Assembly: GCF_020745735.1 (NCBI RefSeq)
Contig: NW_026867842.1
Location: forward strand, 62,001-99,737
Source of the DNA: Hemiscyllium ocellatum
Taxonomy: Eukaryota
Reading direction: 5' to 3'
Length of the DNA: 37,737 nucleotides
Below are positions 3,990-37,737 of this stretch, piece by piece. A program made the translations under genes and the position numbers. The notes below the pieces were generated by a model. That model worked only from the letters and a program-made list of their open reading frames with translations, ran no database searches and was not told the DNA's origin. Within the stretch, counting starts at the first letter, position 1, and every line of letters starts with the position of its first letter.

Positions 3990-4421
3990 TCTGCTCTCTG
4001 CTTCCCCCCCATCACTCTCAACCTCTCCCTGTCTCCCAGTCTCTCGTTCACTCTCAACTTCTTTCTGCCCCTCTCTGTCTCTCCCTCATTCATGTGTCTT
4101 TCTGTCTCTGTCTCTCTCTGTGTCCAGCTGGGCTTGGGAGCTTTGTGAAATTTATTTTTCGATATTAAATCTTGCAGCTGTTCTTCACGCGTGGTCATGG
4201 AGTGTCAGAGGGAAACTTGAGGCCTTCAGTGAGCGGTGGACACCACAGGGACTGGAGTGTGTCATGGACAGTTACAATCCCAGCATGGGGTAATTTGTTC
4301 AGTTTCATTTGTATCTAATTGTGGATGTGTCAGTTCAGGCTGTGGGACTGTGTGTCCATTATTATACATTTTATATAACTGATTGATGTGTCAGTGCATG
4401 AGGTGGTGCTGTGTGTCTTGA

Positions 4422-4449
4422 GGTTTTTGTATGGCTCTGTATCACTGTG
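4422..4449 (-). other. 12-bp-spacer RSS of V (cluster 1)
   Basis: Minus strand CACAGTG (4449-4443), 12-nt spacer, ACAAAAACC (4430-4422); perfect consensus. V-12/J-23 is the kappa configuration. Confidence 0.98.
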
Positions 4450-4754
4450 TTGAGCGGAGCTGCTATACCAGTTGTTCTGACAGTAATAGTCAGCGACATC
4501 CTCATTCTGAACGTTGCTGATTGTCAGGGTGTAACTGGTCCCTGATCCACTGCCGGTGAATCGCTCGGAGACTCCTGTGAATCGAGATGTTGCAGCATAG
4601 ATCAGGAGAGAGGGTTTCTGACCTTCTCGCTGCTGGTACCAACTGAGGTAGCTGCTAATGTCTTGACTGGCCGTACAGGTGAGTTTTGCGGTCTGGCCCA
4701 ATCCCACTGACAACACCGGGGGAGACTGGGTCATGATAATCTCCCCATTGATAC
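4450..4754 (-). CDS. IGKV: Ig kappa-type V exon, unrearranged, open frame ([27 protein letters not shown]...WYQQ...[17 protein letters not shown])
   Basis: Conserved Cys, Trp and YYC; FTGSGSGT; acceptor CCTCAG at 4760-4755; resembles shark kappa (NS4/type III-like) V regions. Confidence 0.96.
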
Positions 4755-4940
4755 CTGAGGGGTCAGAGAGAAACACAGTGAAGTCAGAACTGTCACAGAA
4801 AGAGCCGGTCAAATGAGAGATTGTTGGAGACACTGAGCATTCCTCTGGTTTCAGCATTTTCCCTTCAATCACAAGTCAGTGGAATTGGAGTGAAATGGAG
4901 AGCAGCTAAAGATTCAAGGTGGAAGGAGAGAGATTTGTAC

Positions 4941-4988
4941 CTGCGACACAGAATGCCAGGGGCCAGATCAGCTGGATGTGTGAATCAT
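4941..4988 (-). CDS. V leader exon, frameshifted as given (ATG ATT CAC ACA TCC AGC TGA)
   Basis: 48 nt from ATG to GT donor at 4940; 186-nt intron. Restoring one T (present in cluster 2) gives MISHIQLIWPLAFCVA+G in phase 1. Confidence 0.9.
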
Positions 4989-5046
4989 GGTGTGTGCTCC
5001 TGTCCCTGTGCCTGGTTCCTGATAAACTCTCCCTTCACTGGGCTCT

Positions 5047-5141
5047 GCTTTATAAAGCTGCAGCCTGTGAGAGTCTGACTGGGTGTTCCTCAGTATGTAA
5101 ATGGCATCAGGCAGAGAGAGCCACGTCAGCCCCTCACACTT

Positions 5142-5145
<4 letters not shown>
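5047..5145 (-). promoter_or_regulatory. V promoter of cluster 1
   Basis: TATAAA within GCTTTATAAAGC (5047-5058), octamer variant ATTTACAT (5102-5095), TGACGTGG (5128-5121), ETS-like GAGGAAGTG (5145-5137). Confidence 0.8.
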
Positions 5146-5172
<27 letters not shown>

Positions 5173-5520
5173 ATCCTTTCTTTTCTTTCTCCCTTTTCCC
5201 TTTTTTCTCTTTCTCACCCTTCTCTTGTATACGTTCTTGTTATTCGTTGACTTTCTCTCTCTTTTTCTATTTCCGTCTCCAACTCTGTCCTCTCCCAATT
5301 ATATAACCACTTCTATCTTTCCTTTTTTCCATGTATGTTTGACATTCTGTTTATCTCCCTCCCTTCTGTTTTGGTTGGTCTCTCTCTCTCTCTCTCTCTC
5401 TCTTTCTTATCATTCATTCTTCTCCTTCACTTATATTACTACCTAATTCCTCACTCATTCTCTCCTTATACCCTCAATCTCTAATTGCCTCACTCTCTCT
5501 TTGTTTCCCTCCCTCCAGTC
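5146..5520. repeat. (CT)n and pyrimidine-rich low-complexity tract
   Basis: Directly visible. Confidence 0.9.
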
Positions 5521-5803
5521 ACTCTCTAGCAGGCATTATTCCAGGACATTGGAACAGTGAGTCCTGGGGCAGCAATTAAATGCCTCGCCCTCTCTCACTC
5601 AATCTCACAATGTACACTTGCTCTCTGTCTCTGTCTGTGTGTGTCTTCTGTGTCTCTCTCAATCAAAAGTTCAATGACATGAACAGCATTTAACAAGTCT
5701 CTACTGATCATCAATGATCTAGCAACATCAATCCCAGCTTGGCATTGAGGGAGAGGATCAGCCATGGTCATATTGAATGGCAGAACAGACTCACAGGGCC
5801 AAT

Positions 5804-5845
5804 CCCTAACCCTTACCCTAACCCTAACCCTAAACCTAACCCTAC
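5804..5845. repeat. Interstitial telomere-like (CCCTAA)7, imperfect
   Basis: CCCTAA CCCTTA CCCTAA CCCTAA CCCTAA ACCTAA CCCTAC. Confidence 0.85.
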
Positions 5846-5869
5846 TCCTGCTCTCTATTTCTATCTTTG

Positions 5870-6135
5870 TATGTCTGTGTAATCTCCAATCTCTGTCCCT
5901 GGATATTGATCCCTCTATTCATGGAAAAAGTTGCCTTCCTGTCCACTCTATCCCTGCCTCTCATAATCTTTTTGCCCTTCAGCAGGTTCCCTCTCAACCT
6001 TCACTGCTCCAAGAGAAACAATCCCAAACTTTCCAATCCTTCCTCATAGCTCACACCCTCCAGGCCAGGCAGCATCCTGGGAAATCTTTGCACCATCTCG
6101 AGTACAGTCATATCTTTCTCATAATATGGTGACCA
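5870..6135 (-). mobile_element. CR1 3' fragment (counterpart at about 35810-36060)
   Basis: FWSPYYEKDMTVLEMVQRFPRMLPG; same junction with a GA-rich tract as in the other arm. Confidence 0.8.
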
Positions 6136-6414
6136 GAACATCTCTGCACGTCTGTCTCTCTCTTTCACTGGATTGCCTCTACTCTTTGTCTCACACCTAC
6201 TCTGTCTGTCTCTCTCTCTCTCTGTCCCCTCTCTCTCAGTCACACTGTCTCATACTCTATCTCGCTCTATCTCTATTCTTCAACTCCACCATCTCTACCT
6301 CTCTCTACCTCTCTCTCTCTCCCCCGCTTTTACTCATCTTACACTGCCTGAGATTCTTTATCCTGCTCTCTCTCACTTTCACACCCTGCCCTTCTATGTC
6401 TCTCTCGTCAACAT

Positions 6415-6454
<40 letters not shown>

Positions 6455-6465
6455 TCTCTGCCTTT
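6136..6465. repeat. CT/CA-rich low-complexity tract
   Basis: Directly visible; mirrored by the GA-rich tract at 35230-35800. Confidence 0.85.
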
Positions 6466-6929
6466 CCAACAAGGTCCCAAGTGGTAAAAGTTAAATACAG
6501 GTTATATCTCCTCCAAATCTAATGGATGTTAACCCTTGACACCAGGAGTATGTCTACTCCTGGAATAAAGGCCCATTTCCCACATTGACCAGGGTTTGGC
6601 CTCTCTCAGGAAGACGGTCAGATTCTTGTCAAATGAAGGGCAATTCTGTGCTGTTGGCCCATTCTTCCTGGGGACTGGTTTGGACACAAACCTCATTCCA
6701 TGAAAGCCCAGCAGAGGGAGGAGATCCTCAGGCCATCAGTATGACCTGGAGGGATAGGACAGGATCTGACCCATTGACCCATCCTATCCATTCACAACAT
6801 GTTCCAATCCTTTCCCCTCACCTTTCCCTTCCATGGTCAAGCTCCAGTTTTATTGGTATGAGGATTGGACCATCACACAGTTACTACAGAAAGGAAATGA
6901 GCCCCACACTCACTACAGTATCCATGTCC

Positions 6930-7280
6930 CACTGGACTGTCCAGTGGAGACCAGTAAGCATGGAATTCATTCCCACAGAACTCTCCAGTAGAGACCATTA
7001 AACATAGGCATCTTTGCTGCTGGAGCCTCCAATGGAGACCAGTAAATATGGGTCTATTTCCCACTGAATACTCGAGCAGAGCCTAGTTAACATGGACCTT
7101 ATTCCTACTGGGCCCTCCAATAGAAACCAGGAGAGAAAGGCCTCCATTTCTTTGAACTCTCCAGTGCAGACCAGTAAATATAGACGAGCTTCAAACTGGC
7201 TCCTCCAATACAGACCAGTAAAGATGTGACTCTTTGTGAATGGATCCTCCAATACAGACCAGTAAACAAGGATCTCATTG
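6930..7280. repeat. Degenerate 44-bp minisatellite, about 8 units; remnant continues at about 8340-8470
   Basis: ACCAGTAA-like core at 6950, 6994, 7038, 7082, 7126, 7170, 7214, 7258 (exact 44-nt period). Confidence 0.9.
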
Positions 7281-7289
7281 CAAGATTGA

Positions 7290-8310
7290 ACTTCGGAATG
7301 AGGAGCAGGAATAGGTAATCAAACCCGTTTCCTATTTAACATGATCATGGCTGAACTTAACCTCCTCTCCACTTTCCAGACGGCTACCTATTGCCCTCTA
7401 TCCTGCTTTTCATCAGAAAGATATCTGTTTCTTTCTTGAATCTGTTGATTGATTCTGCCTCCACTGTGCTTGAGGAAGGGGGTGGGGAGGGGGGGGGGAG
7501 TGGGAGGGGGGTGGAGATGATGGTGCGCACTGACATCCACAGATTCGCAACCTTCTGCGAGAAGTAGTTGGAATGGAACAGATTCCATACAGTATGAAAC
7601 CAGGCCATTCAGCCCAATAAGTCCACACCAACCCTTCAAAGAGCATTCCACCCAGAGCCATTCTGGAACCTTTTCCCTGTAACCCTATATTTCCCATGAC
7701 TAATGAATCTAACCTACACTTTCCTGGACACTATGGGTAAATTAGCATGGCCAATCCTCTGAACGTGTACATCATTAGACTGTGGGAGGAAATCAGAGCA
7801 CACAGATGAAGCTCACACAGACAGGGGGAGAATGTGCAAACTCCATTGCCTGAGGGTGGAGTCGAACCTGGGGCCCTGGCACTGTGAGGCAGCAGTGCTC
7901 ACCACTGCACCACTCTGTCACCTGTAGTTTCTCCTCATCTCAGTTTTAAACATACCTCCTCTCACTCTATGTCTATGACCTCTTGTTCGAGACTGGCCCA
8001 CAAGAGAGTACATCTGTTCAATGCTTGCCCTATCAATCTCCTTTAGCATCTTATATACTTCACTCAGATCTCCCCTTCATACAACTGAATTCCAGTGAGT
8101 ACAAGCCCTAGCTATTCAACCATTCCTCATATGGCAGCCCTTTCATCCGGGGAATCAGTCTGGTGAACATCCTCTGAACTGAATCCAGTGCCACCATATC
8201 CTTCACCAAGTAAGGAGACCACAACTGGACACAATGCTTCAGATGTGGTCTCACCAATGCCTAATAGAATTGTCACAATATTTCTTTATTTCTGTAATTC
8301 AGTCCTTTTA
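7290..8310 (-). mobile_element. CR1 3' fragments with a nested HE1-like SINE (about 7560-7922)
   Basis: Reverse-complement SINE head and V-domain (GAGAATGTGCAAACTCC; GCAGCAGTGCT); CR1 tail motifs. Confidence 0.8.
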
Positions 8311-9059
8311 TAATAAATACCAAGATTCCAATTGCTGCAAGAAATGCCAACATTCCAATTCCATGGGACTCAATTGGAACCTCCAACAGAGATCAGGAAA
8401 CATGGGCCTCCATCCCACTGGAATGTCCAATGGACAGCAATAAGCCTGAGCTTCTTTCCCACTGGACCCTCCAGTATTGGAGCTTCAAACCCCACTTCCT
8501 CTCCATCACCTAGGTCTCTTATTTCAATCTCCACTACATTGTTTGTCTCTGCACTACATCAGCCCCTTGACCACAGAAACTCTTATTCCTGCTCATCCCA
8601 CCTCCAAACTCCAACATTCTGATGTCCTCTCTCAGCTTACTCCATCTGTGCTCCATAAATTCCAAATTGTCTGGAATGAAATGGCCCCTTCCCTGTCTCA
8701 TACCAAGGAGGAGATTGACAGATTTGATTTTAGTAATTAGTTGAAAGTTTACGGAGAGTGGGTGTGGTCAGAATTGGTCAAATTGATGACGGCTCCTGCA
8801 GTTGAATATCCTGCTGGCAGGCTCCAGCCTTTTACACACAGAATGGAGAAGTGTGTATTGTAGGCATATATTGTAAAGTTCCATAGAATTAAACCTCAGC
8901 ATCAAATGTCCCTCAGGAGGGGAGAGGGAATGTTCAGGGTCCTGAGCTCCATTTCCCAGCCCAGGCAGTTTGCCTCCCAATGAATGAATGAGATGCCAGC
9001 TTGGAGCCCAGGTTAGGGACAGTCTCTGCTGTGGACCCAAGTCAACAAGAGGCAGCTGG

Positions 9060-9430
9060 AGATCGAGCTGAAAGGAAAGATTTGCTGGGTTATGGGGAGA
9101 GAGGGGGCAGTGGGAATAATTGGATCACTCACAGACACCACAGGTGGGGGGGGGGGTGCAGGTTTAGGACTAAATAGAGAAGGAACTTCTTCACCCAGAG
9201 GGTGGTGAATCTATGGAATTCCCTGCCCAGCGAAGTCGTTGAGGTTTCCTCAGTAAATGTTTTTAAAGCTGATTTAGGTAATTTTTTGAACAGTAAATGA
9301 ATCAAGGGTTTTGGTGAAAAGGTGGATAAGGGGGAGCTGATGCCATGAAAAGATCAGCCATGATCTTACTGAATGGCAGAGCAGCCCAAGAGGCCAGAGA
9401 GCCTGCTCCTGCTCCTGGTTTTAATGTTCT
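9060..9430 (+). mobile_element. CR1 3' UTR fragments
   Basis: TTCACCCAGAGGGTGGTGAATCTATGGAATT...GATCAGCCATGATCTTACTGAATGGC tail motifs. Confidence 0.8.
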
Positions 9431-9780
9431 TATGTGCTGTCAGATTCCAGGGAGTGCAGACAGTTCACAGTTTTCTCCCGTCTCAGTAACAAATGTGCAG
9501 CTGCTCCGAGCTCCTTCTTTCACTTCCTCACTTGGTGAAGTTTCAACCTTGCGATCTGACAGCCTTTGCAGTTATTTTTTACACTGGGGCTTTCTGCTGT
9601 GGTCAGAATCTCTAATAATAAGTGTCCAATCAGTGACAATCACAGCAGCTAAGAGCAGTCAGGACTGAGTAGCCAGGCTCACTGGGAAACACATTGGGAA
9701 GATCAAAGCCATCCCCTTCAGGTCCCGGTACAACCTCCATCCCTCTCCCTGAGCACTGTCTGCTGCTCAACCAGACTCTT
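9430..9780. promoter_or_regulatory. Conserved non-coding element, candidate B-cell enhancer (copy 1)
   Basis: Inverted homolog at 30850-31200; 96-nt core 9573-9668 has 1 mismatch; motifs CAGCTG 9498-9503, TTTCACTTCC 9518-9527, TGTGGT 9598-9603. Confidence 0.6.
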
Positions 9781-9783
9781 TAC

Positions 9784-9995
9784 AAAAACAGAATACCTCA
9801 GCAGGTCTGGCAGCATCTGGGGAAAGAAATCAGAGTTAACCTTTCAGGTCGAGTGACCCTTCCTCAGAACAGTTCTGAGAAGGTTCACGTCCCAAAATTT
9901 TAACTCTGCTTTCTCTCCACAGATGGTGCCAGACCTGCCGAGCTTTTCCAGCAATTTCTGTTTTTGTTCCTCATTTGCAGCATCTGCAGCTTTTT
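9784..9995. mobile_element. Inverted pair of Penelope-type terminal fragments forming a palindrome
   Basis: Centre CTCAGAAC-A-GTTCTGAG (9863-9879); about 90-bp related arms; hammerhead-like core in the left arm (minus strand). Confidence 0.7.
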
Positions 9996-10079
9996 CGGCT
10001 TTTATTTCATACCAGATTCCTTAAAATCTTGGCCTCATCTTTGAGGCTGATCTGAGCCCCAAATCCTCCACAGCACAGA

Positions 10080-10370
10080 GATCACTCACTGAAAGTCCCA
10101 CTCGTTGCTTTGGGACTCCAAACATGACCATTCTAATGTTGTCTTGGGCCACATCACAGCCACTGCCCTCTGTAAACTTCAGCTCACCCCAAAACTCTGC
10201 TGCCCGTATCCGAACTCGCAACAAATCCCATCCCCATCCCCCACCGTCCTCACTGAGCGACATTGGCTCCCGGTCCAATAACACCTCGATTTTCAAATTC
10301 TCGTCCTTGTTCTGAAGTCCCTCCCTGTCCATCGACCCTCCCCATCTCTGTAACCTCCTCCTGGCTGCCT
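10080..10370 (+). mobile_element. L2-type LINE RT C-terminal fragment
   Basis: ORF 10124-10315 PQNSAARIRTR...IFKFSSLF resembles the L2 motif QNAAAR...W...RIxFK. Confidence 0.6.
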
Positions 10371-13080
10371 CACTCAGTGTGGTCAGCAATCTTGGATATA
10401 TGGCTCTCTATTCCTTCATCCAAGTCATTCAGAAATATTATGAAATGCTAAAGTCCCAGGACGGATCCCTGGCACACCACTATTCACCTCTTGCTCATTG
10501 GAGGACACACACATTATTCCCTCACTCTGTCTCCTATCTCCAAACTAATTCCTAACCCAAGGCAAATGTTTTTTCTCTTATTCAATATGGTTCCACGTTG
10601 ATGAACAATCTCTCAAACAGTGAAACTCGGAGCAGGAATAGGCCATTCAGCCCTTCGAGCCTGTTCTGCCATTCAATATGATCATGGCTGATCATCCAAC
10701 TCAGTTGCCTGTTCCTGCTTCATCCCCATAACCTTTGATCCCTTTCATTCTAAGAACTGTATTGTGCCCTTTCTGGAAAACATTCAGTGGTTTGAGCTGA
10801 ACTGCTTTCAGTGACAGAAACGTCTACAGGCTTCCTGTAGAATGAAAATATTTCTCTCCATCTCAGCTCTAAATGTCCTTTCCCGTATCCTTAAACTTTA
10901 ATCCTTGATTCTGGACTCCTTCGTCATCAGGAACATCCTGTCTTGTCCTGTTAGGATTCTAGAGTTTTCAGTGTGACTCCCCATAATCTTCTAACCTCCA
11001 GTGAATATAATCCTAACTGATCCAGTTTCTCATCAGATCTAAGTCTAATTGCTGTCATCCCAGGAGTCAGCCTGGTAAACCTTCGCTGCCCTCCCTCCAC
11101 AGCCAGAACATCTTTCCTCAGATAAGTAGACCAAAACTGCACACAATACAATCGTAAAATCGCACAGTACAGAAGAGGCCCTTCGACCCATTGTACCTGT
11201 ACCATCCAAACTACAGTAAACCTGCATTCATCCAAATTTCCAACACAAGGCCCATAGCTTTAAATGTTATGATATTTCAAGGGTTAATCCAAGTACTTTT
11301 AAAAGTCCTCCTCAACTACCAGCCCAGACAATGCAAACCAGACCCCCACCACCCTCTGGGTGAAAATCTCCTCTTCAAATCCCCTATGAAGCTCCTGTCT
11401 TTCACAGTGAATGTGTGCCAACTCCGAAGAAGAGGAACAACTGCTTTCTATTCATTGTGTCCATTCCCCTCATAGCCGTTTACACCTCTATCAGGTCCTC
11501 TCAACCTTCTCTGCTTCAAAGAAAACAACCCGAGTTTATCCAGCCTCTCTTCATCGCTGAAATGCTTCATCCCAAGCAACATCCTGGTGACTATTCTCTG
11601 CACCCCCTCCAATACAATCCCATCCTTCCGATTGCGTGGTGACCAGAACTGCACACAGTACTCCAGCTGTGGCCTAACAAAAATTCTGAATAGCTCCAAC
11701 ATATCTTCCCTGGTCTTCTCATCTATACCTGAAATGATAAAGGCAAGTGTCCCATATGATTTCATCAATACTTTATTCACCTGTTACATTGTCCAAAGTT
11801 CATCACCTCACATTTATCAGGGGTAAGTTCCATCTGACTCTGATCTGCCCATCTGACCAATCCAGTTAGATCCTCGTGTCACCCAAGACCTTCTTCCTCA
11901 TTGTCAACCATCTGCCAAACCTCGTGTCATCCAAAAACTCAGTCATCATCCACTCACCCCCACCCCTCACCTCTCACATTCTCATCTTCATTGTTTCAAT
12001 ACATCCTGAACAATAAGGGACCCAGCACTGATCCCTGTGGTATCCCACTGCACACTGGGCCCAGTCACATAAACAAATTTCTGCCTCCACCCTCTGTCTC
12101 CTGTCACTGAACCAGTTTTGGTTTGAATATTCAGGAGTGGACTCACTAAGGCCCCATACAATTACAGCAAGACATCCCTGTTCCTGTACGCAAATTCTCT
12201 CACTATAAAGGTAACATATCATTTACCTTCTGCACTGCCTGCTGCACCTACACGCTGACTTTCAGTGACTGGTATACACGGACACAGGCATCTCTGCATC
12301 TTCTTCACTGCTCCCCCTCCCACCCAGCTTTGTGTCATCTGCAAATTGGAGATATTACTCTTAAGTTCCCTCATCTAAACCATGAACAAATATGAACATT
12401 ACTGACATGAATAGAGAAGTGGTTGGCAGGCTGGAAACAAAGAGTAAAAAAAACAGACCTTTTTCTGAAAAGGTCTGTTTTTTTTTACTCTTTGTTTCCA
12501 GCCTGCCAACCACTTCTCTATCCATGTCAGTACACTGCCCCAGTCCATTGAGTCTTACTTTTACTCGCTAATTTCTACTGTGGGACTGTTTAAAAGCCTT
12601 CTGAAGGTTCCAGATAAACCACATCCGTTGGCTCCCCCTTGTCAAATCTGCTCATTCCATCCTCGAACAATTCCAGTCAATTTGTTCTGCATGATTTCCC
12701 TTTCCACAAACCATGCTGACTCTGTCTAATCCTATCACTGTCTTCCACGTGCCCAGTGATTAAATCTTTCACAACGAACTTGACTATTTTTCCCAATACC
12801 AATGTCAGGCTGACTGGTCCAGGTTGCCCACTTTTCTCTCTCCCTCCCATTTTAAACAGTGATGTTACATTCGCAACTCTCCAGTCACTGGGAAAGTTCC
12901 AGAATCAATAGAATCTTGAACACCAATGTTCCCAAAATTTTTGGGCAATTCCTGAAGTAATCTGAAATGTAGGTTATTGGTCCCTGCGGATTTATCAAAC
13001 TTTAATCCCATAAATTTTCCAAAACCATTTCCCGAATAAAACTAATTTTCTTCAGTTCTGCCCTCAGTCTATACCCTGAC
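10370..13080 (-). mobile_element. Stack of old CR1 fragments, largely shared with the other arm
   Basis: CVQFWSTYLRKDVLAVEGGQRRFTR; RPQLEYCVQFWSP; RT motifs; junctions mirrored at 28040-30540. Confidence 0.85.
12400..12532. repeat. Near-perfect inverted repeat (64/65-bp arms, 4-nt loop)
   Basis: Arms 12400-12463 and 12468-12532 differ by one substitution and one homopolymer base; loop TCTG. Confidence 0.97.
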
Positions 13081-13960: not shown

Positions 13961-14059
13961 ATTTCTCTGGTTTTAATCAAAATGGATTTTGTTTTATTGG
14001 GTCTGAATAACCTACATCCACATCATGTTCGATTAATCTGGGACACCTAAGTGTATCTT

Positions 14060-16150: not shown

Positions 16151-16154
16151 GTAT

Positions 16155-27960: not shown

Positions 27961-29220
27961 GTTCTTGGACCTGAGAAAGCTCAAAGGAACAGAATGATCT
28001 TGGGGTACTTGTCCACTGATCCCTGAATGTGGCAAGACAGGTTAACAGAGCAGTTATGAAGGCACAGGTCACTTGCCTTGGTCATTTCAGGAGGTATTGA
28101 TTAAGCAGAACATTGGTGAGGCCACAGCTGGAGTACTGTGTGCAGTTCAGGTCACCACACCATAGGAAGGATGTGATTGCACTGGATGGGGTGCAGAGGG
28201 GGAATCACCAGGATGTTGTGTGGGATGGAACCTCTTAGTGATGAAGAGAAATTGGATCAGCTCGGTTGTTTTCTTCAGAGCAGAGAAGGTGGAGGGGGAC
28301 CTGATCGAGGTGTATAAGGTTATGAGGAGAATGGACAGGGAGGAGACAAAGCAGCTGTTCTCCTTCATGGGAGGGTCAATAAAAAGTTGGTTTACATTCA
28401 TTGTGAAAGATAGGAAGTTTCAAGATGTTTTGAGGAAAATGTTTTTAACCCAGAGGGTGGTGGGGGTCTGGAACGCACAGCCTGGGAGAGCAGTTGACGT
28501 GGGAAACCTCAAAAACTTTAAAAAGTACTTGGGTGAGCAGTTGAAATGTCATAACATTCTAGCTATGGGCTCATATTGGAAAGTGGGATTGGTGCAGGTT
28601 TAGTGTAGTTTGGCTGGTACACAGTTAATGGGCTGAAGGACCTGTTCTGTACTGTGTGATTTTATGATTGTATTGTGTACAGTTTTGGTCTCCTTATCTG
28701 AGAAAGGATGTTCTGGTTGTGGAGGGAGGACAGCGAAAGTTTACCAGACTGATTCCTGGGATGACAGCACTTAGATCTGTTGAGAAACTGGATCAGTTAG
28801 GATTATATTCACTGGAGGTTAGAAGATTGAGAGGAATCACGTTGGAACCTTTAAAATCCTAACAGGACAAGACCGGAAAAACACAGGAAGTATGTTCCTG
28901 ATCATTGGAGAATCCAGAACCAGGAATTACAGTTTAAAGAAAAGGGAAAGGTTATTTCAGACTGAGCTGAGGAGACATTTCTTTAGCCAGAGAGTGGGAA
29001 GCTGATGGAATATTCTATCACAGAAAGCAGTTGAGACCAAAACATTAAAAGTTTTCAAGAAGGAGATAGGTCTAAAGGGACTTAGGACGAAAGGGATTAA
29101 GGTTATGGGAAAAAAGTGGGAATGGGGACTAAGTTGAATGATCAGCCATGGTCATATTTAATGGCAGACCCCACTCGAAGGGCTGAATGGCCTAGTCCTG
29201 CTGTTCGTTACTTTGTTTCT
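27960..29220 (+). mobile_element. Two stacked CR1 3' fragments, counterpart of 10620-11800
   Basis: Shared junction ACTGTG(C/T)GATTTTA(C/T)GATTGTATTGTGT(A/G)CAGTTTTGG. Confidence 0.85.
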
Positions 29221-29263
29221 GCGTTTGAGAGACTGTCCGTAAACATGGAAACATATGGAATTA

Positions 29264-30314
29264 TAGAGTCAAAGAGTCATCGAGTCCTACAGCACAGAGA
29301 CAGGCTTTTTGGTCCACACTGGTCCATGCTGACCAAAATGTCCATCCATGCTAACCCCATTTCCCTGCACTTGGCCCATATCCTTCGGAGCCTTTCCTAT
29401 CCATGCATTTGTCCAAATGCCTTTTTAAAGTTGTTAATATACCCGCCTCAATCACTTCCACTGGCAGATCATTCCATATGCGTGCCACCCTCTGTGTAAA
29501 AAGTTGTCCCTCAGGTTCCCTTTTATTCTTTCCCTCTAACCTAAAACCCCTCTCATCCTCAATTCCCCAACCCTGGGAAAAAGACTGAGTGCATTCACCC
29601 TATCCATGTCTCTCAAGGTCTTATACACTTCTAAAAAAAACCCTCAGTCTCCTACACTCTCTGAAAAAAGTCCTAGCTTGTCCAACCTCTCACAAAAACT
29701 CAGACTGTTGAGTCCTGGCAACATGCTTGTACATTTCCTCTGAACTTGTTCCAGTTTAATAATGTCCTTCCTATAACAAGGTGACCAAATACTCCAAGTG
29801 CGACCTCACCAACGTTCTGTACAATGGTAACATAACTTCTCAACTTCTATACTCAATGCCCTGACTGATGAAGGCCAGTGTGTCAAAAGCCTTCCTCACT
29901 GCCCTGTCGAATTGTGACTCAACTTCCAGAGAACCGTGTACCTGAACTCCAAGATCTCTCTGTTTCACTACAGTCCTTAAGGCCTTACCATTCACCATGG
30001 TACTCCCACCTCGATTAAACTTCCGAAAGTGCAAGACCTCACAATTATCTCTCTGAACTCATTTTGTCATTTCTCTGCTCATTTCTCCAGCTGATCAAGG
30101 TCCTGCTGCAATTTCTGATAACCTCCCTCAATGTCTACTGTAATGTCATCTGCAAACTTACCAATCATTCCTTGCAGATTCTCATCCAAGTTATTGATGT
30201 AAATAGCAAAGAGTAATGGGCCCAGGACCGAGCCCTGAGGCGCTCCACTAGACACAGGCCTCTAGTCTGACAAGCATCCTTCCACTGTTACCCACTGCTT
30301 CGTACCATCAAGCC
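29264..30314 (-). mobile_element. CR1 insertion specific to arm 2
   Basis: Flanks join seamlessly in arm 1 (about 10560-10620); AATTA at 29259-29263 and 30315-30319 may be a short TSD. Confidence 0.75.
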
Positions 30315-30849
30315 AATTAAAGAAAAGTATTTGTCTTTGGTCAGGAATTAGTTTGGAGGTAGGAGGCAGAGAGGAAGAATAGTGAGTGCATCCTCCAGTG
30401 AGGAAGATGTGAATAGTGGTATCCCCAGGGATCTGTGCTGGGAGCTCAGCATTTTATGATATTTCTGAATGACTTGGATGAAGAAACAGAGAGCTGTACA
30501 TCCAAGATTGCTGATCACACTGACTGAGGCAGAGATAGGGAGGGTGGAGGGCAGAGAGGGTTTTGCGAACAAGGATGAGAACTCGACAATCAAGGAGTTG
30601 CTGGAGAGGAGCCAATGTAGATACAGGGTGCAGGGGGTTGGGGGAACAGGACTTGATGCAAGTTTGAATACAGGCATCAGAATTTGGGATGAACTGAAGG
30701 TTATGGAGGGCGATTGCTGTGATGTGTGCTAGCACAACATTGGAATGGTCATGTTTGGAGTCCCACAGACATGATTGAGATTTTCAGTGGCTGGTCTGTA
30801 TAATATGGAGGATATAGGGGTCAGATCATTCTCAGAGATGTGGCCACGT

Positions 30850-31200
30850 TTGTAAAGGGTCTGGTTGTGCAGCAGACCCCCAGGGAGAGGGATGGAGTTT
30901 GGAGCAGGAGATGAAGAGGATGGCTTTGATCTTCCCAATATGTTACACAGTGAGTCCGGGCTTTTCAGTCCTGACTGCTCTTAGCTGCTGTGATTGTCAC
31001 TGATTAGACACTTATTATTAGAGATTCTGACCACAGCAGAAAGCCCCAGTGTAAAAAATAGTTGCAAGACTGTCAGAGCACAAGGTTGAAAATTCACCAA
31101 AAGAGGAAGTGAAAGAAGGAGCTCGGAGCAGCTGGGTGTTTGTTACTGAGAGGGAGAAAACTGTGAACTGTCTGCTCTCCCTGGAACCTGACAGCACAGG
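30850..31200. promoter_or_regulatory. Conserved non-coding element, candidate enhancer (copy 2)
   Basis: Core 30965-31060; ACCACA 31030-31035; GGAAGTGAAA 31105-31114; CAGCTG 31129-31134. Confidence 0.6.
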
Positions 31201-31479
31201 AGGCTGGTTCTGGGATTTTTCTTTTTCAGAAACAGCACATTGATGGAAAAGTGTCAGTCACTCTCTCACAAACACACACGCCTGCACTTCGAGATTAGAA
31301 ACAGAATCCAGCAGCAGCTCTGTCTCCAAGCTGTGAAACCTGCACAGAATTGTTCCCTCATTCAGTTTTAAACTGGCAGGATAGACCAAGCAGGGAAAGC
31401 AACACAGTGGTGTGTACAGTCAGAAGGGAGTTGCCCTGGGAGTCCTCACCATTAACTATGGAACCCATGAAGCCTCATG

Positions 31480-31890
31480 ACAGCAGGTCAAACATGGGGA
31501 AGGAAACCTCCTGCTGATTACCACATAGCACCGCCCTCCGCTCCAACCTCAACTGAGCAGTCAGTCCTCCTCCATGTTTGACAACACTTGGAGGGAGCAC
31601 TGAGGGTGGGAAGGATGCAGGATATACCCTGAGTAAGGGACTTCAAAGTCCACCATCAAAAGCTGCTCAGAAGCATCACTACTGAGCAAGCTGGTCAGGT
31701 TCCACCTGATTCAGCTGCTCGACTGGACCTGGGGCAGGTGGTGAGGGAACCAACAAGAGGGAAAAACACACTCACTATCACCCTCACCAACCTGCCTGCT
31801 GCTGGTGTATCTGTCCATGACAGTATCAGTAAGGGTGACCACCGCACAGTCCGTGTGGAGACAAAATCCCATCTTCACATTTAAGTTACC
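31480..31890 (+). mobile_element. LINE endonuclease fragment (same family as 14810-16150)
   Basis: QVVREPTRGKNTL...LTNLPA...VHDSISKGDHRTV. Confidence 0.75.
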
Positions 31891-33129
31891 TTACATTTTG
31901 TTGGGCAAGAGATTCGGGATGTCAGGAAGAAATTTGTGTTTAGCAGCAATTGGTAATGACTTGGAAATTAGTGCCCATTCAGGTGACAGGTGAAGACACT
32001 CAGTGATTGCAATGGCAGATTGGATGGGCTCTTGATGGAAATAAACCTGCAAGGCTCTGGGGGTCGAGTAGGGGAGGGGGTGGGACTGACTGGATTGCTC
32101 CATGAAATGACAGCATTTACCTGACAGGCTGAATGTTCTCCCCCTGTGCTGGAAATAGATCTCACTCAATGAGGGGTTCACAATTAGAGAGTTTGGATGC
32201 AGTAAATACAGGACAAATTGTTTCTCCAGGCAGGAGGGTCAGTAACCAGAGGGCACACATTTCAGAAAGGGTCTGAAGAACAAGAGAGAAGATAGGAACA
32301 TTTTTATCCAGCGAGTTTATGATGACTGTCTGCAAGGTGAGTGGGAGTGGATTCAACAGCAACTTTCAAAAGGGCCTTTGGAGAAATAGCTGTAAAGGAA
32401 ACAATTGCAGGGTTATACAGGAAGGGCTGGGGAAATGGGACTCATTGGATTAATTTGACTAACAGTCACAATAGGCCCAGTGACCTCTGTCTGTGCTGTA
32501 TAAGAACTTACACACACTTAGTCTCACCTTTACACAAAGACTGGGAGAAACAGACAACCCAGTTTACAGAAGAATGCTTTCTCAAACACTCTGAACCAAC
32601 TCAGGGAACAGGCCCAGACTAGATTTACTAGAGTAAGTCAGCAAATCAATGACAAGGGAACAGTAAACCAAAAGCAATGGGACTGAACAATATATTCAAT
32701 AGCACACCAATCGAGAGGAGGAGGGATGAAGGGCAGGAGGTCAGAGAGCCTGAAGGCTCTGCTGTCAATGGTGGGATGGAGGAAGCAGCAATGGACAGGA
32801 GACCAGAGACAGAAGATGGAAGGGGAGGGAGGGAATGTGAGTCTGCAGCAGGACACAGATTGAGGGAGGAGGGAGGCCATGGAGGCAATTGGCTGGCAGT
32901 GAGCTCATTCTTGAACGACTTCAGATGTCAGACAAGGAAGGGACCACTCCATATCAGACAAGTTGGGGTTTATGGAATGTGACTTCAGGAAGCTGGGAGA
33001 GGACATTGGAATCAATAGTTAGGACAAGCAGGAATTAGTGTTTCTGTGGCCAGGGGACTGAAGTCGTGCAGAGACAGACAGTGTTGTTGAGACTGAAATA
33101 AGAGAACTTCATGATGGAGTGGATTTGGG

Positions 33130-33295
33130 GTTTGCAGCTCAAGTACTGGACAGTCCAGTGGGAAGTAGGCCCATGTTTACTGGTCTCTCCTGAAGCATCC
33201 AGTGAGAAGGAGGTCCATGTTTATTGGTGTCTGTTGGAGGTTCCAGTGGGTCAGAAGTCCATGTTTACTGGTCCTGTGGGAAGGTGGCTCATGTA
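33130..33295. repeat. 44-bp minisatellite, arm 2, first part (continues at 34545-34770)
   Basis: TTTACTGGT-like core at a 44-nt period (33184, 33228, 33272). Confidence 0.8.
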
Positions 33296-33299
33296 TACA

Positions 33300-34540
33300 T
33301 CATCATAGAGTCATAGAGGTTTACAGCATGGAATCAGGCCCTTCAGCCCAACTCATCCATGCCCACCAAGTTCCAAAACTGAACTAATCCCATTTGCCTG
33401 TGTTTGGCCCAAATCTCTCTGAATCCTTCCTATCCATGTTGCTGTAAAAATCTCCTTGAAATGTAGTAACTGTACTCCCCCTCTACCACTTCTCTGGCAG
33501 CTCATTACACATACACACCAACCTCTGTGTGAAAAGGTTCGCTCTCAGTTTCCTTCTAATTCTTTCCCCCCTCAACTTAAACCTATTCCTTCTAGTACTG
33601 GATTCTCCTACCCTGGGGAAAAGACTTTGGCTATTTACCTTATCTATGACTCTCATGATTCTATAAACCTATATAAGGTCACCCCTCAATCTCCTGCATT
33701 CACTGGAAAAACATCTTGGCATATCCATCCTCGCCTTATAATTCAAACCCTCCAATCTTGGTAACATCCCTGTTAATCTTTCTTTTATTCAAACCAGCGT
33801 AATAACTTCCTTCCTATAGCAGGGTGAGCAGAAAAATACACAGTGACCAAACGTGGCCTTCCCAATGCCTTGTACAGCTGTAACATGATGTCCCAGCTCC
33901 TGTACTCCCTGCTTTGACCAGTGAAGGTGAGCGTGCCAAATACCTTCTTCACCACCCTGTCTACCTGTGACACCATTTTCAAGGAACTATGTACCTGTAC
34001 CCCTCGGTCTCTCTGTTCAACAACACTCCCCATGGCTCTACCATTAATTGTGTAATTCCTGCCCTGGTTTGTCTTACCAAAATGCAACTCCTTCTTTTAT
34101 CAAAATTTCCATCTGGATTTGTTGACTCACTGGCCCAGTTGATCAAGATGACATTGCACTTTTGGATAACCTTCTTCCCTGTCCACGATGCCAACAATTT
34201 TAATGTCAGCCAAAAATGTCCTGACCGTTCCTGCTATTTTCTCTCCAAATTGTTCATATAAATGACGAACAACAGTGGATCCAGGATCGATTCTTGTGGC
34301 AGACGGCTGGTCACTGGCCTCCAGTCTGAAGAACAACCCTCTCTCACAGCCTCTGCCTCCTATCATCAGGCCAATTTTATATCCAATTTGCTCGGTCTCC
34401 TTGGATCCTATGTGATATAATCTTACTGAGCAATCTACCATGAGGAACCTTGTCTAAGGCCTTGCTAAAGTCCAAGTAAACAGAGTGTACTGCTCTAGCT
34501 TTATCTAGGTTTGTGATTACTTCTTCAAAAACTCAGTCAT
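33300..34540 (-). mobile_element. CR1 RT-to-3' end inserted into the minisatellite of arm 2
   Basis: MHFGKTNQGRNYTING...DIMLQLYKALGRPRL; tail near 33305. Confidence 0.85.
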
Positions 34541-35229
34541 CTACTTGTCTGAATTGGAAAGTGCAATGAATAGGAGGCCCATGTTTACTGATTCTCTTGG
34601 AGGATCAAATCAGAAGTAGGCCAATGTTTACTGGTTCTGTTGGAGATCCAGCAGGGAAGAAGCCATATTTACTGGTCTCTTCTGGGAACTTCAGTGGAAG
34701 GAAGCCCATGTCTCTCTATCGAGCAGCCTTGTGAACTGAATTCCATGTTTAGTGGACTCTGTTGGAGAGTCCAGTACGTCATGAACACATGGTGGGTATG
34801 GGATCAGTTCCTTTCTGTTGTAACTGTGTGATGCTCCAGCCCTCATCCCAGTCAAACAGCCTGATTCAGAGACTGATCATGGAAGGGGAAGGAAAGGGAA
34901 AAGGATTGGAACATGTTGTGGATGGACAGGCTGGGTCACTGGTCAGAAATTGTCCTTTTCCTCCAGCTCACACTGATGGCCTGAGGATCTCCTCTCTCTG
35001 CTGGGCCTTCATGGAATGAGGTCCAAACCAAACCAGTCCCCAGTGAGAATAGGGCAACAGAACAGAACTGCCTTTCATTTGACAAGAATCTGTCCATCGT
35101 CCTGAATGAGGTCAAACCCTGGTCAGTGTGAGAAATGGGGAGTTACTCCAGGAAAAGACATGTTTTGGGTCAAGGGTTAACATCCATTAGTGGGGCAGAG
35201 CAGAGGGAGATTTATCCTGAATTCAACTG

Positions 35230-35800
35230 TCACCACCTGGGACACTGTGAGAAAGACAGAGAAGCAAGACAAAGAGAGAGGTAAAGGCAAATTGTGTGTG
35301 TGATCGAGCGATAGAGGGAGGGGCATCTGAGACAGTGTGTGATATGTGAAGGGGCCAAGAGAGAGGTAGAGGGAGGTAGACGTGGTGTGATTGAGGGATA
35401 GAGAGAGAGAGAGAAACAAGATGTGATTGATCGGGATGGATAGAGAAAAAGAGATAGGATGGGTGTGATACCAAGAGTGAAGGGAATCAAGAGAGAGTGG
35501 GTAGGGTTGAGTGTGTGTGAGAGAGAGAGAGACATGAGTATGGTAAGAGACAGAATGACAGAGATGGAGGGAGAGAGACTGTAGATTGGGATGCAGAGAG
35601 GGAGGGATAGACAGAGAGAGGAATAGAGAGGGGCAATTAACATTTGGAGGTTTTCAATTGAAGTGAGCAATGGAGCGAGTGATGGTGAGAGAGAAAGATG
35701 CAGAAATAGAGATTATAGAACGGAGTGAGGAAGTGTAAGTTGGAGAGAGTGGCTTTGAGACAGAGTGAGAGAGAGAGAGAGAGAGAGAGACAGAGGGAGG
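35230..35800. repeat. GA-rich low-complexity tract
   Basis: Directly visible. Confidence 0.85.
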
Positions 35801-36720
35801 GGACAAGTCCTGGTCACCACATTCTTGGAAGGATGTGATTGTACTTGAGAGGGTGCAGAGATTTACCAGGATGCTGCCTGGGATGGAGGGTCAGCTGTGG
35901 GGAAAGATTGGAATGGTTGGGGTTGTTTTCCTTGTAGCAGTGAAGGCTGAGAGGGGACCTGATAGAGGGGGATAAGATTATTCAGGGCAGTGATAGGGTG
36001 AGTAGGAAGGCACTTTTTACAAGAGTCAAGGACTCACTAACCAGGGACAGAGATTGAAGGAAAAATAGACATGGACACAAAAAAACTGCGGCAGGAGTAG
36101 GCCATTCGGCCCTTTGAGACTGTTCTGTCATTCAGTATGATCATGGCTGATCCTCTCTCTTGAATTCACCTTCCTACTTTCTCCCCATTCCCTTCATGCT
36201 GTTAAAATGCAAAACAAATATCTCTCTCTTTCTCTTAAATATATTCAGTTCCTTGTCCTCCATAGCCTTCAGTGGAAGATAATTCCACAGATCGACCATC
36301 CTCTGAATGAAGAAATGTTTCCTCATCTCAGTCTGAAATGGTCTTCCCCATATCCCCCTGAGACTGTATCCCCCGGTTCCAGACTCCCCAACCAGGGGAA
36401 ACCTCCTCCCTGCCCAGCCCTGTTAGAATATTATACATTTCAATCAGATCCCCTCTTATCCTTCTGAGTCCAGGCCCAATCGAGTTGGAGAGTGAGAGGA
36501 GAGTTAGGGAGAAATGTTTTCACTCAGAGGGTGGTGGGAGTCTGGAACTCACTGCCTGAAAGGCTGGTTGAGTCACAAACTTCATGACATTGGAGCAGTG
36601 TTTTTAGATATTCCTTTGTTGCTGTAGCCTCCAGGGTAATGGGCCAAGAGCTGGAGGATCATCAGATCTTTGTTTACAGCACAGACACAATGGGCCAAAT
36701 GGCCTCATTCAGTGCTGTCC
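35800..36720. mobile_element. Mixed-orientation CR1 3' fragments
   Basis: GGTCACCACATTCTTGGAAGGATGTG (+); GGAGTAGGCCATTCGGCCC (-); CACTCAGAGGGTGGTGGGAGTCTGG (+). Confidence 0.75.
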
Positions 36721-36741
36721 ACATCAATGATTCTCTGAGAC

Positions 36742-36772
<31 letters not shown>

Positions 36773-36773
36773 A

Positions 36774-36872
36774 GAGGAAGTGTGAGGGGCTGACGTGGCT
36801 CTCTCTGCCTGATGCCATTTACATACTGAGGAACACCCAGTCAGACTCTCACAGGCTGCAGCTTTATAAAGC
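36774..36872 (+). promoter_or_regulatory. V promoter of cluster 2
   Basis: GAGGAAGTG 36774-36782, TGACGTGG 36791-36798, ATTTACAT 36817-36824, TATAAA 36865-36870; identical to cluster 1. Confidence 0.8.
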
Positions 36873-36930
36873 AGAGCCCAGTGAAGGGAGAGTTTATCAG
36901 GAACCAGGCACAGGGACAGGAGCACACACC

Positions 36931-36978
36931 ATGATTTCACACATCCAGCTGATCTGGCCCTGGAATTCTGTGTCGCAG
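36931..36978 (+). pseudogene. V leader exon with a 1-nt deletion (MISHIQLIWP, then shifted; donor in phase 0)
   Basis: GGCCC instead of GGCCCC; GT donor at 36979; 186-nt intron to 37164. Confidence 0.88.
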
Positions 36979-37164
36979 GTACAAATCTCTCTCCTTCCAC
37001 CTTGAATCTTTAGCTGCTCTCCATTTCACTCCAATTCCACTGACTTGTGATTGAAGGGAAAATGCTGAAACCAGAGGAATGCTCAGTGTCTCCAACAATC
37101 TCTCATTTGACAGGCTCTTTCTGTGAAAGTTCTGACTTCACTGTGTTTCTCTCTGATCCCTCAG

Positions 37165-37454
37165 GTATCAGTGAGGACATCATCATGACCTAGTCTCCCC
37201 CACTGCTGTCAGTGGGACTGGGCCAGACCGCAACCATCACCTGTAGGGCCATTAGCAGCTACCTTGCTTGGTACCAGTAGCGAGAAGGTCAGAAACCCTC
37301 TCTCCCGATCTATGCTGCAGCAACTCAACTCACAGGAAGTCTCCGAGCAATTCACCGGCAGTGGATCAGGGACCAGTTTCACCCTGACAATCAGCAACAT
37401 TCAGAATGAGGATGTTGCTGACTATTGACTGTCAGCAGCATTACAGCTGGCCTT
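37165..37454 (+). pseudogene. IGKV: Ig kappa-type V pseudogene
   Basis: TAG stops at 37191 and 37278; 9-nt CDR1 deletion at 37250/37251; +1 insertions near 37337 and 37427; CDR3 start CQQHYSWP. Confidence 0.95.
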
Positions 37455-37482
37455 ACCGGTGATACAGGGCCATCCAAAAATC
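37455..37482 (+). other. Degenerate 12-RSS of the V pseudogene
   Basis: ACCGGTG, spacer ATACAGGGCCAT (homologous to the cluster-1 spacer), CCAAAAATC; the essential CAC is lost. Confidence 0.8.
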
Positions 37483-37737
37483 TCAATTGCACAGCACCAC
37501 CACCTGTCTAACACATTCCACATTTTGTGACATAAGACACAGTTCCACCTCCTGCACTGACACATCCACAGTTATATGTAAATGAAATTGAACAAATTAC
37601 CGCCAAACCGGGATGTCCACGTACATGACCACACTCCAGTCCCTGTGGTGTCCACCGCTCACTGAAGGCCTCACAAGTTTCCCTCTGCATTCCATGGCCA
37701 CATGTGAAGAGCAGCTGCAAGATTTAACATCGAAAAA
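37483..37737 (+). other. V-J intervening sequence of cluster 2 (truncated by window end)
   Basis: Homologous to the reverse complement of 4150-4421; J predicted about 200 bp beyond the window. Confidence 0.85.

What the first reader, a model, noticed from the sequence alone, without database searches (positions are those of the whole stretch)
4150..37737. Two Ig kappa clusters head-to-head as arms of a large inverted duplication
Seen: collinear inverted homology of V, leader, promoter, CT/GA tracts, the unique block 6520-6770 (vs 34960-35190), the 44-bp minisatellite, the conserved element and old CR1 fragments. It includes identical junctions between unrelated CR1 pieces (about 11130-11170 vs 28640-28690). 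Arms span at least 4150-11800 and 28040-37737; shared derived bases at 12600-12830 vs 24290-24500 may extend them. Arm-specific insertions postdate the duplication (29264-30314, 33300-34540, 9784-9995, probably 24510-27960). Known: shark light chains are multiple V-J-C clusters. Inference: a local inverted duplication made this pair, with V leaders only about 32 kb apart, and the TE layers date it.
Basis: partly seen in the sequence, partly recalled or inferred. Interest (0 to 1): 0.72.

Follow-up and report, generated by a model that had tools for sequence, protein, structure and literature searches.

The report
Head-to-head shark kappa light-chain clusters
Two copies of a shark antibody kappa light-chain gene unit face away from each other about 32 kb apart; they are old relatives, not a fresh duplicate, both V genes look damaged, and the same layout recurs in this gene family, so it is an ordinary feature of it.

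Summary
A collinear reverse-complement chain (10 blocks, 4.9 kb aligned, 4103 bits) links 4155-11688 to 37737-28106. The best same-strand chain scores 757 bits. Arm 1 holds a split NS4/kappa-type V-J on the minus strand. Arm 2 holds a dead V on the plus strand. The two leader ATGs lie 31,943 bp apart.

Neutral upstream DNA differs by K2P 0.26-0.31 between the arms. Each arm has closer kin among Chiloscyllium punctatum contigs, at 0.08-0.18. A 1-kb upstream tree splits into lineage A (arm 1, L001-L003) and lineage B (arm 2, L004, L007, L009), each with 100/99 support. The arms are therefore not each other's nearest relatives.

The features called shared, including the LINE-fragment junction, are family-wide. 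Two "arm-specific" insertions are lineage-wide. The 390-bp promoter-leader-intron tract is 95-99% identical in all seven units compared.

A second head-to-head pair in C. punctatum (L008) also combines an A-type arm and a B-type arm. This suggests an old two-cluster module copied as a unit. The evidence is suggestive, not proof.

The scan has already noted this layout on other pieces of this genome (s1-228448, s1-236454, s1-216823, s1-223295).

The parts
4155..11790 (-). Arm 1, a lineage-A kappa cluster unit: V1 plus about 6.8 kb of 5' flank. The firm BLAST limit is 11688.
   Evidence: It is collinear with C. punctatum contig L001 from window 13413 to 2934 at 79-91%.
28040..37737 (+). Arm 2, a lineage-B kappa cluster unit: 5' flank plus pseudogene V2. 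It runs off the window end. The firm BLAST limit is 28106.
   Evidence: It is collinear with C. punctatum L009 from 31314 to 37737 at 79-86% by BLAST, and with L004 and L007.
4450..4754 (-). V1 exon. The reading frame is open (101 codons read in frame) and it encodes a V-set domain.
   Evidence: Pfam V-set E 1e-16. The best protein hits are C. punctatum kappa-like chains at 89%.
4941..4988 (-). V1 leader exon. It is 48 nt long, where six compared units have 49 nt (arm 2 lacks a different base). One T is missing from a TTT run, so the ATG is out of frame with the signal peptide.
4755..4940 (-). V1 leader intron, 186 bp. It is part of the tract 4755-5146 that is 95-99% identical in all seven units compared.
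   Evidence: Nurse-shark NS4 genes have the same 186-bp length (PMC2193156).
4422..4449 (-). V1 recombination signal: heptamer CACAGTG, 12-bp spacer, nonamer ACAAAAACC.
3916..3989 (-). J1: nonamer GGTTTTTGT, 23-bp spacer, heptamer CACTGTG, then J coding 3950-3916 (FGKGTKL motif) and a splice donor. The V-J interval is 499 bp.
5048..5102 (-). V1 promoter: octamer-like ATTTACAT at 5102-5095 and a TATA box at 5057-5048. Arm 2 has the same motifs at 36817-36824 and 36862-36871.
36931..37482 (+). V2 pseudogene. The leader exon 36931-36978 lacks one C. The intron is 36979-37164. The V exon 37165-37454 has two TAG stops, a 9-bp CDR1 deletion and two +1 insertions. The heptamer has decayed to ACCGGTG.
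9433..9786 (-). Conserved upstream element E in arm 1. K2P is 0.10 to arm 2 and 0.047 to L001.
30849..31198 (+). Conserved upstream element E in arm 2.
8698..9153 (-). Segment Y, downstream of E. It is specific to lineage A: found in arm 1, L001 and the sense arm of L008, and absent from arm 2.
31199..32930 (+). Segment X, downstream of E. It is specific to lineage B: found in arm 2, L009 and the inverted arm of L008, and absent from arm 1 and L001.
29268..30322 (+). INS-1, a LINE 3' piece inserted in arm 2 with a target-site duplication of about 8 bp. The empty site in arm 1 is at 10573/10574.
33274..34539 (+). INS-2, a LINE piece inside the arm-2 minisatellite. It is also present in L009, so it marks lineage B and is not private to arm 2.
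9787..10010 (-). INS-3, a palindromic element in arm 1 with a target-site duplication of about 17 bp. It is also present in L001.
24500..27960 (+). INS-4, a decayed LINE of about 3.4 kb next to the inner end of arm 2. The Pfam matches (OSK-like, endonuclease) are weak.
11791..28039 (.). Spacer between the arms, made of LINE fragments. No gene was detected. L001 extends the lineage-A unit to 13413.
6920..7280 (.). 44-bp minisatellite in arm 1. The arm-2 counterparts are 33145-33273 and 34555-34700.

Best explanation
The window holds two units of the shark kappa (NS4/type III) light-chain cluster family in divergent orientation.

Shown:
- The units are homologous by descent over V, the promoter and at least 7.5 kb of 5' flank.
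- They belong to two old lineages of that flank, A (arm 1) and B (arm 2). Each lineage has several closer relatives among C. punctatum contigs.
- After the A/B split, each lineage gained its own LINE insertions and its own segment downstream of the conserved element (Y in A, X in B).
- V2 decayed to a pseudogene, and V1 acquired (or was assembled with) a 1-nt leader deletion.
- Different segments give different trees. The V exon and V-J interval do not follow the upstream tree, so units have exchanged segments.
- The promoter-leader-intron tract is held nearly constant across the whole family.

Inferred: an inverted duplication, or an inversion of one unit, happened once, long ago. The resulting A+B head-to-head pair was then copied as a two-cluster module. 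On this view the pair is a descendant copy and not the product of its own private event.
For: - Collinear inverted chain.
- Gene anatomy. It matches nurse-shark NS4 split genes (186-bp leader intron, V-J of about 500 bp; PMC2193156).
- K2P by segment: arm 1-arm 2 is 0.26-0.31 in the flanks. Arm 1-L001 is 0.14-0.18 and arm 2-L009 is 0.08-0.17.
- Upstream trees: clades A and B each have 100/99 support.
- Mosaic histories: in the V-exon tree arm 1 pairs with L006 (96/95) while L001-L003 form a separate clade. In the V-J interval arm 1 pairs with L004, whose upstream is lineage B.
- Promoter-leader-intron tract: 95-99% identical among seven units.
- Second pair: L008 carries two copies of element E in opposite orientation, 3.6 kb apart. 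The inverted copy continues into X and the sense copy into Y.
- Scan notes report the same layout at other places in this genome.
Against: - The tree of element E alone groups the two window arms together against both L008 arms (72/89). That is the opposite of what an old A/B module predicts. However, the AU test does not reject arm 2 + L008-inverted (p 0.24), and E is constrained.
- Only one other pair could be examined, and its partner V lies outside the fetched locus.
- The species of the window is unknown. The C. punctatum contigs may therefore be orthologues or same-species paralogues.
- L009 lacks E next to X, although that scaffold has gaps.
Confidence: 0.55

Rival explanations
1. Lineage-A and lineage-B units multiplied separately. 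They ended up head to head here, and in L008, through unrelated rearrangements such as inversions of single units. On this view no pair module exists.
For: The element-E tree does not support pairing A with L008-sense or B with L008-inverted. Segment trees are mosaic, which shows frequent exchange among units. A single additional heterotypic pair has a 50% chance under random pairing.
Against: Both pairs that could be read are heterotypic X/Y with the same geometry, E elements facing each other. Scan notes say the layout recurs at several pieces of this genome.
Confidence: 0.25
2. One reading: one local inverted duplication created exactly this pair. The arm-specific transposon insertions then date it. 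The C. punctatum relatives are orthologues of each arm in another species.
For: Collinear inverted homology with shared LINE-fragment junctions. INS-1 and INS-3 have target-site duplications. The nearest relatives of the two arms lie at roughly similar distances.
Against: C. punctatum has at least three A-type units and at least three B-type units. The B clade is a star that includes arm 2, so both lineages multiplied after the split. The shared junction is also in L001 and L008. INS-2 and INS-3 are not private to one arm.
Confidence: 0.15
3. Assembly artefact: a false inverted join, or a fold-back, somewhere in the spacer.
For: The stretch 13413-24285 is not corroborated by any other assembly.
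Against: The arms are 75-89% identical and carry different insertions. They are not the near-identical copies expected of a haplotig or a fold-back. The window has no N. Each arm is matched over 6-10 kb by independent C. punctatum contigs. The same layout is present in L008.
Confidence: 0.04

Closest known systems
Nurse-shark NS4 (kappa/type III) split light-chain clusters (Lee et al. 2000, PMC2193156)
   Same: One V and one J in the same orientation. The leader intron is 186 bp and the V-J interval is about 500 bp (499 bp here). V carries RSS12 and J carries RSS23. The family mixes usable genes with pseudogenes that have stops and decayed heptamers.
   Different: That work cloned inserts of 2.5-2.8 kb and did not map neighbouring clusters or their orientation. 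Here 7-10 kb of 5' flank and the neighbour are visible. The C exon is not in the window.
Teleost IgL cluster arrays with opposite orientations and inversional joining (zebrafish, PMC3014032; torafugu, PMC5241823; review PMC5192425)
   Same: Closely linked V-J-C units occur in both orientations on one chromosome.
   Different: In teleosts V is often inverted relative to its own J-C, and joining between clusters has been documented. Here V1 and J1 share one orientation, so joining would be deletional. V2 has lost its heptamer, so it cannot take part in cross-joining.
Human IGK locus, with proximal and distal V-kappa copies as a large inverted duplication (from general knowledge, not checked here)
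   Same: An inverted segmental duplication inside a kappa locus.
   Different: The human case has hundreds of kilobases per copy, a translocon organisation, a recent origin and high identity. Here the units are about 10 kb, the organisation is miniclusters, and the arms are old (about 75% identical).
Other head-to-head kappa pairs noted by this scan in the same genome (s1-228448, s1-236454, s1-216823, s1-223295)
   Same: Two kappa units head to head, with arms of about 16 kb in one note and V genes about 28 kb and about 41 kb apart in two others. An upstream conserved element occurs in each arm.
   Different: In this pair V2 is dead and V1 has a leader frameshift. I could not read those other windows, so I could not compare sequences.

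Membership tests
Cartilaginous-fish kappa (NS4/type III) split V-J-C minicluster | V exon encodes a kappa-type V-set domain | tested here: met
   Pfam V-set E 1e-16. The best hits are 'immunoglobulin kappa light chain-like' proteins of C. punctatum at 89%; other sharks score 80-84%.
Cartilaginous-fish kappa (NS4/type III) split V-J-C minicluster | V with RSS12 and J with RSS23, both in the same orientation and a few hundred bp apart | tested here: met
   Arm 1 has CACAGTG-12-ACAAAAACC at 4449-4422 and GGTTTTTGT-23-CACTGTG at 3989-3951, with a 499-bp interval. In arm 2 the V heptamer has decayed to ACCGGTG, and J2 lies beyond the window.
Cartilaginous-fish kappa (NS4/type III) split V-J-C minicluster | Split leader with the family's 186-bp intron | tested here: met
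   The introns 4940-4755 and 36979-37164 are both 186 bp. This equals the length reported for nurse-shark NS4.
Cartilaginous-fish kappa (NS4/type III) split V-J-C minicluster | One C exon downstream of J | not testable with these tools
   No C-domain ORF lies in 1-3900. C1 and C2 lie outside the window. In L009 the related gene model spans 18.8 kb.
Cartilaginous-fish kappa (NS4/type III) split V-J-C minicluster | Open reading frame from the leader ATG through V (a usable gene) | tested here: inconclusive
   The V1 exon is open, but its leader is 48 nt instead of 49 nt (TTT to TT). This may be real or a homopolymer error, and reads were unavailable. V2 clearly fails: two stops, three frameshifts including one in the leader, and a broken heptamer.
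Inverted segmental duplication (arms homologous by descent) | Collinear reverse-complement homology that extends beyond genes and single repeats | tested here: met
   10 blocks, 4.9 kb aligned, 4103 bits, against 757 bits for the same-strand control.
Inverted segmental duplication (arms homologous by descent) | Shared junctions of older transposon fragments at homologous positions | tested here: met
   The junction near 11150/28670 aligns in both arms. It also aligns in L001 and L008, so it is inherited by the whole family.
Private local inverted duplication that made this pair | The two arms are each other's nearest relatives | tested here: not met
   The upstream tree places arm 1 with L001-L003 and arm 2 with L004, L007 and L009, each at 100/99. 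K2P is 0.26-0.31 between arms and 0.08-0.18 to those relatives.
Private local inverted duplication that made this pair | Insertions present in one arm only postdate the event and are private | tested here: not met
   INS-3 is present in L001 and INS-2 in L009. INS-1 and INS-4 could not be tested, because no lineage-B contig covers them.
Inversional inter-cluster V-J joining (teleost type) | Functional RSS on a V and on a J of neighbouring, oppositely oriented units | tested here: inconclusive
   The V1 RSS12 is intact and the V2 heptamer is broken. J2 lies outside the window.
Assembly false duplication | Near-identical arms without private differences | tested here: not met
   The arms are 75-89% identical and carry different kb-scale insertions.

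The most novel reading that the evidence does not exclude
The real repeat unit of the shark kappa array may not be one V-J-C cluster. It may be an old two-cluster module: a lineage-A unit and a lineage-B unit head to head, with their conserved upstream elements facing each other. On this view the module arose once by an inverted duplication, predates the split of the V subfamilies, and has been copied as a pair ever since. It could form one shared regulatory domain.
Probability: 0.4. Interest if true: 0.5.

Novelty: new member of a known kind. Interest (0 to 1): 0.3.

Why it matters
Shark light-chain genes are the textbook example of the minicluster organisation. How the clusters are laid out along chromosomes, and how the array grows, is barely described in the papers I could search.

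This window adds one well-resolved head-to-head pair. It shows that such pairs are old and heterotypic, not fresh duplicates. It also gives simple markers to test whether the array expands by copying pairs: the X or Y segment next to the upstream conserved element, and the 1-kb upstream tree.

By itself the pair is ordinary. Both V genes look damaged. Inverted neighbours are common in multigene families, and the scan has met the same layout repeatedly in this genome.

Tried and rejected
I therefore ran no read laying, made no read check of the spacer or the two leader homopolymer deletions, and ran no expression test.
- The chromosome-level assemblies of C. punctatum (GCA_047496795.1) and H. 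ocellatum (GCA_020745735.1), and the S. torazame contig, returned no DNA. I could not look for the orthologous pair, and the species of the window stays unknown.
- The search of earlier findings does not accept places outside the window. Word searches for pair-unit analyses returned nothing further.
- Rfam at gathering thresholds found nothing in the window.
- Pfam scans of spacer ORFs gave only sub-threshold RT, endonuclease and OSK-like hits. The CR1 label is therefore unverified.
- The element-E tree could not resolve the module question.
- No second kappa protein is annotated on the L008 scaffold, so the partner V of that pair could not be fetched.
- L009 showed no inverted partner within 8 kb upstream, and its scaffold has gaps.
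- Rejected: the idea that the near-identical promoter-leader-intron tract is a private gene-conversion tract of this pair. The tract is 95-99% identical in all seven units.
- Rejected: the idea that the matches are only transposon-family hits.


Full report
**1. Observation**

A self-comparison of the window against its reverse complement gives a single collinear chain:
- 4155-5172~37737-36747 (87.9%)
- 5748-5800~36160-36108
- 5841-6206~36101-35743 (75%)
- 6455-7179~35262-34539 (75%)
- 8375-8698~33245-32930 (74%)
- 9433-9786~31198-30849 (89%)
- 10011-10573~30865-30323 (76%)
- 10574-11688~29267-28106 (75%)
- 12609-12819~24495-24285 (77%)

The chain scores 4103 bits over 4.9 kb. The best same-strand chain between the two halves scores 757 bits and is essentially one LINE match. 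The window contains no N. The 44-bp minisatellite, the mirrored CT/GA skew and the conserved element are all present. The leader ATGs lie at 4988 and 36931, 31,943 bp apart.

**2. Gene anatomy**

Arm 1 carries these features on the minus strand:
- An octamer-like ATTTACAT (5102-5095) and a TATA box.
- A leader exon (4988-4941) and a 186-bp leader intron.
- An open V exon (4754-4450). Pfam scores it as V-set at E 1e-16.
- A canonical RSS12 (4449-4422).
- After 499 bp, an RSS23 and a J segment with the FGKGTKL motif and a splice donor (3989-3916).

The 186-bp intron and the roughly 500-bp V-J interval match those reported for split nurse-shark NS4 (kappa) genes (PMC2193156). The best protein matches are kappa-like chains of Chiloscyllium punctatum at 89%. 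Hemiscyllium, Cetorhinus and Ginglymostoma proteins score 80-84%.

The V1 leader exon is 48 nt, where six compared units (L001-L005 and V2) have TTT and V1 has TT. This puts the ATG out of frame with the signal peptide.

V2 on the plus strand is clearly dead:
- a missing C in the leader;
- two TAG stops;
- a 9-bp CDR1 deletion;
- two +1 insertions;
- a heptamer decayed to ACCGGTG.

No C exon lies in the window.

**3. Are the arms each other's duplicates?**

I fetched nine loci from the 2018 C. punctatum assembly through their annotated V proteins.

- L001 is collinear with arm 1 from window 13413 to 2934 at 79-91%. That is 1.7 kb beyond the arm.
- L009 is collinear with arm 2 from 31314 to the window end at 79-86% by BLAST.
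- L004 and L007 also follow arm 2 upstream of V.

K2P distances in presumably neutral upstream blocks:

| Comparison | K2P |
|---|---|
| arm 1 - arm 2 | 0.26-0.31 |
| arm 1 - L001 | 0.14-0.18 |
| arm 2 - L009 | 0.08-0.17 |

A maximum-likelihood tree of the 1-kb block upstream of the promoter gives two clades, each with 100/99 support. Lineage A is arm 1 with L001-L003. Lineage B is arm 2 with L004, L007 and L009.

The arms are therefore not nearest relatives, and both lineages multiplied after they split. I could not establish the species of the window. The contigs may be orthologues or same-species paralogues, but the conclusion holds either way.

**4. What the 'shared' and 'private' features really are**

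- The LINE-tail/internal-LINE junction near 11150/28670 aligns in both arms, and also in L001 and L008. It is inherited by the whole family.
- INS-1 (29268-30322) is a clean insertion with a target-site duplication of about 8 bp.
- INS-3 (9787-10010) has one of about 17 bp. INS-3 is also in L001.
- INS-2 is also in L009.
- These insertions mark lineages, not this pair.
- The match 12609-12819 vs 24285-24495 is a LINE reverse-transcriptase fragment. It is collinear and in the right orientation, but it is weak evidence for longer arms.
- The spacer holds only decayed LINE pieces.

**5. Mosaic histories and constraint**

- The promoter-leader-intron tract (4755-5146) is 99% identical between the arms. 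It is also 95-97% identical to every C. punctatum unit. It is therefore a family-wide constrained or homogenised tract, not a private conversion tract.
- V exons are closer between the arms (K 0.138) than arm 1 is to L001 (0.21).
- In the V-exon tree arm 1 pairs with L006 (96/95).
- In the V-J interval arm 1 pairs with L004, whose upstream is lineage B.
- Units have clearly exchanged segments. No single divergence value or transposon layer can date the pair.
- Element E (9433-9786 / 30849-31198) evolves about 2.5-3 times more slowly than its flanks.

**6. A second pair**

L008 lies on a 1.65-Mb C. punctatum scaffold and holds a kappa gene of a different V subfamily. It carries two copies of element E in opposite orientation, only 3.6 kb apart and 65-67% identical.

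Immediately downstream of E there are two mutually exclusive segments:
- X (31199-32930) occurs in arm 2, in L009 and in the inverted arm of L008.
- Y (8698-9153) occurs in arm 1, in L001 and in the sense arm of L008.

Both head-to-head pairs therefore combine an X arm with a Y arm. The simplest account is one ancient inverted duplication, divergence into A and B, and then copying of the pair as a unit.

Three caveats apply:
- The E-only tree groups the window arms against both L008 arms (72/89). The AU test does not reject the alternative (p 0.24).
- Only one extra pair was readable.
- The partner V of that pair lies outside the locus, and no protein is annotated for it.

**7. Context**

Reviews state that shark light-chain genes are miniclusters that rearrange within a cluster (PMC5192425, PMC12227049). 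Oppositely oriented clusters and inversional joining are documented in teleosts (PMC3014032). I found no paper describing the orientation of shark kappa clusters along chromosomes.

The scan's own notes report the same head-to-head layout on several other pieces of this genome. One follow-up calls it routine in a roughly 200-copy array.

**8. Verdict**

This is a real, old pair of inverted kappa cluster units. It is an ordinary member of a known gene organisation. The claim of a private local duplication dated by its transposons is not supported. The pair-module idea is the only part with some novelty, and it needs a genome-wide census.

A mis-join in the spacer and the two single-base leader deletions therefore remain unchecked.

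Noticed in passing
window 4755-5146 and 36773-37166; L001-L005: The promoter, leader exon and the whole 186-bp leader intron are 95-99% identical in all seven units compared. The adjoining V exons are only 80-90% identical and the flanks about 75%. The intron is better kept than the coding exon, which suggests a regulatory role or family-wide homogenisation.
   Followed up: partly
window 4981-4983 (V1) and about 36956-36959 (V2): Each leader exon has its own 1-nt deletion in a homopolymer run. V1 has TT where six compared units, V2 included, have TTT; V2 has CCC where six units, V1 included, have CCCC. These could be real inactivating mutations or long-read homopolymer errors.
   Followed up: partly
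L008:985-1366 and L008:4945-5293 (C. punctatum BEZZ01000502.1): A second head-to-head arrangement. Two copies of the upstream conserved element lie in opposite orientation, only 3.6 kb apart and 65-67% identical. The gap between the two copies in the window is about 21 kb.
   Followed up: partly
window 5000-23000 vs 23000-36000: GC skew and LINE orientation switch sign near 23 kb. LINE-like ORFs are on the minus strand to the left of that point and on the plus strand to the right, so they run in the same direction as the nearest V gene. In the J-C intron (1-3900) the LINE runs antisense to the gene.
   Followed up: no
window 5804-5844: A short telomere-like (CCCTAA) array of about 7 units is private to arm 1. 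It appears to have grown out of the GGCCTA tail of an old LINE. Arm 2 has the unexpanded tail, and none of the nine loci has three or more perfect units.
   Followed up: partly
L009:7600-8330 (C. punctatum BEZZ01001156.1): This lineage-B unit has segment X but no recognisable conserved element E in front of it. A stretch similar to L001:7581-8244 lies there instead. The scaffold has gaps nearby.
   Followed up: no
window 23059-23222, 15677-15796, 22281-22375: These are copies of a small mobile unit of about 120-140 bp, up to 92% identical within the window and also present in L007 and L009. Another note claims it has a hammerhead core. Rfam at gathering thresholds found no ribozyme anywhere in the window.
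   Followed up: partly
window 1-3900; L007:7217-9050; L009:15400-24643: The J-C intron downstream of J1 is collinear at 75-88% with two C. punctatum units whose upstream regions are lineage B. This is another sign that the units are mosaics.
   Followed up: partly
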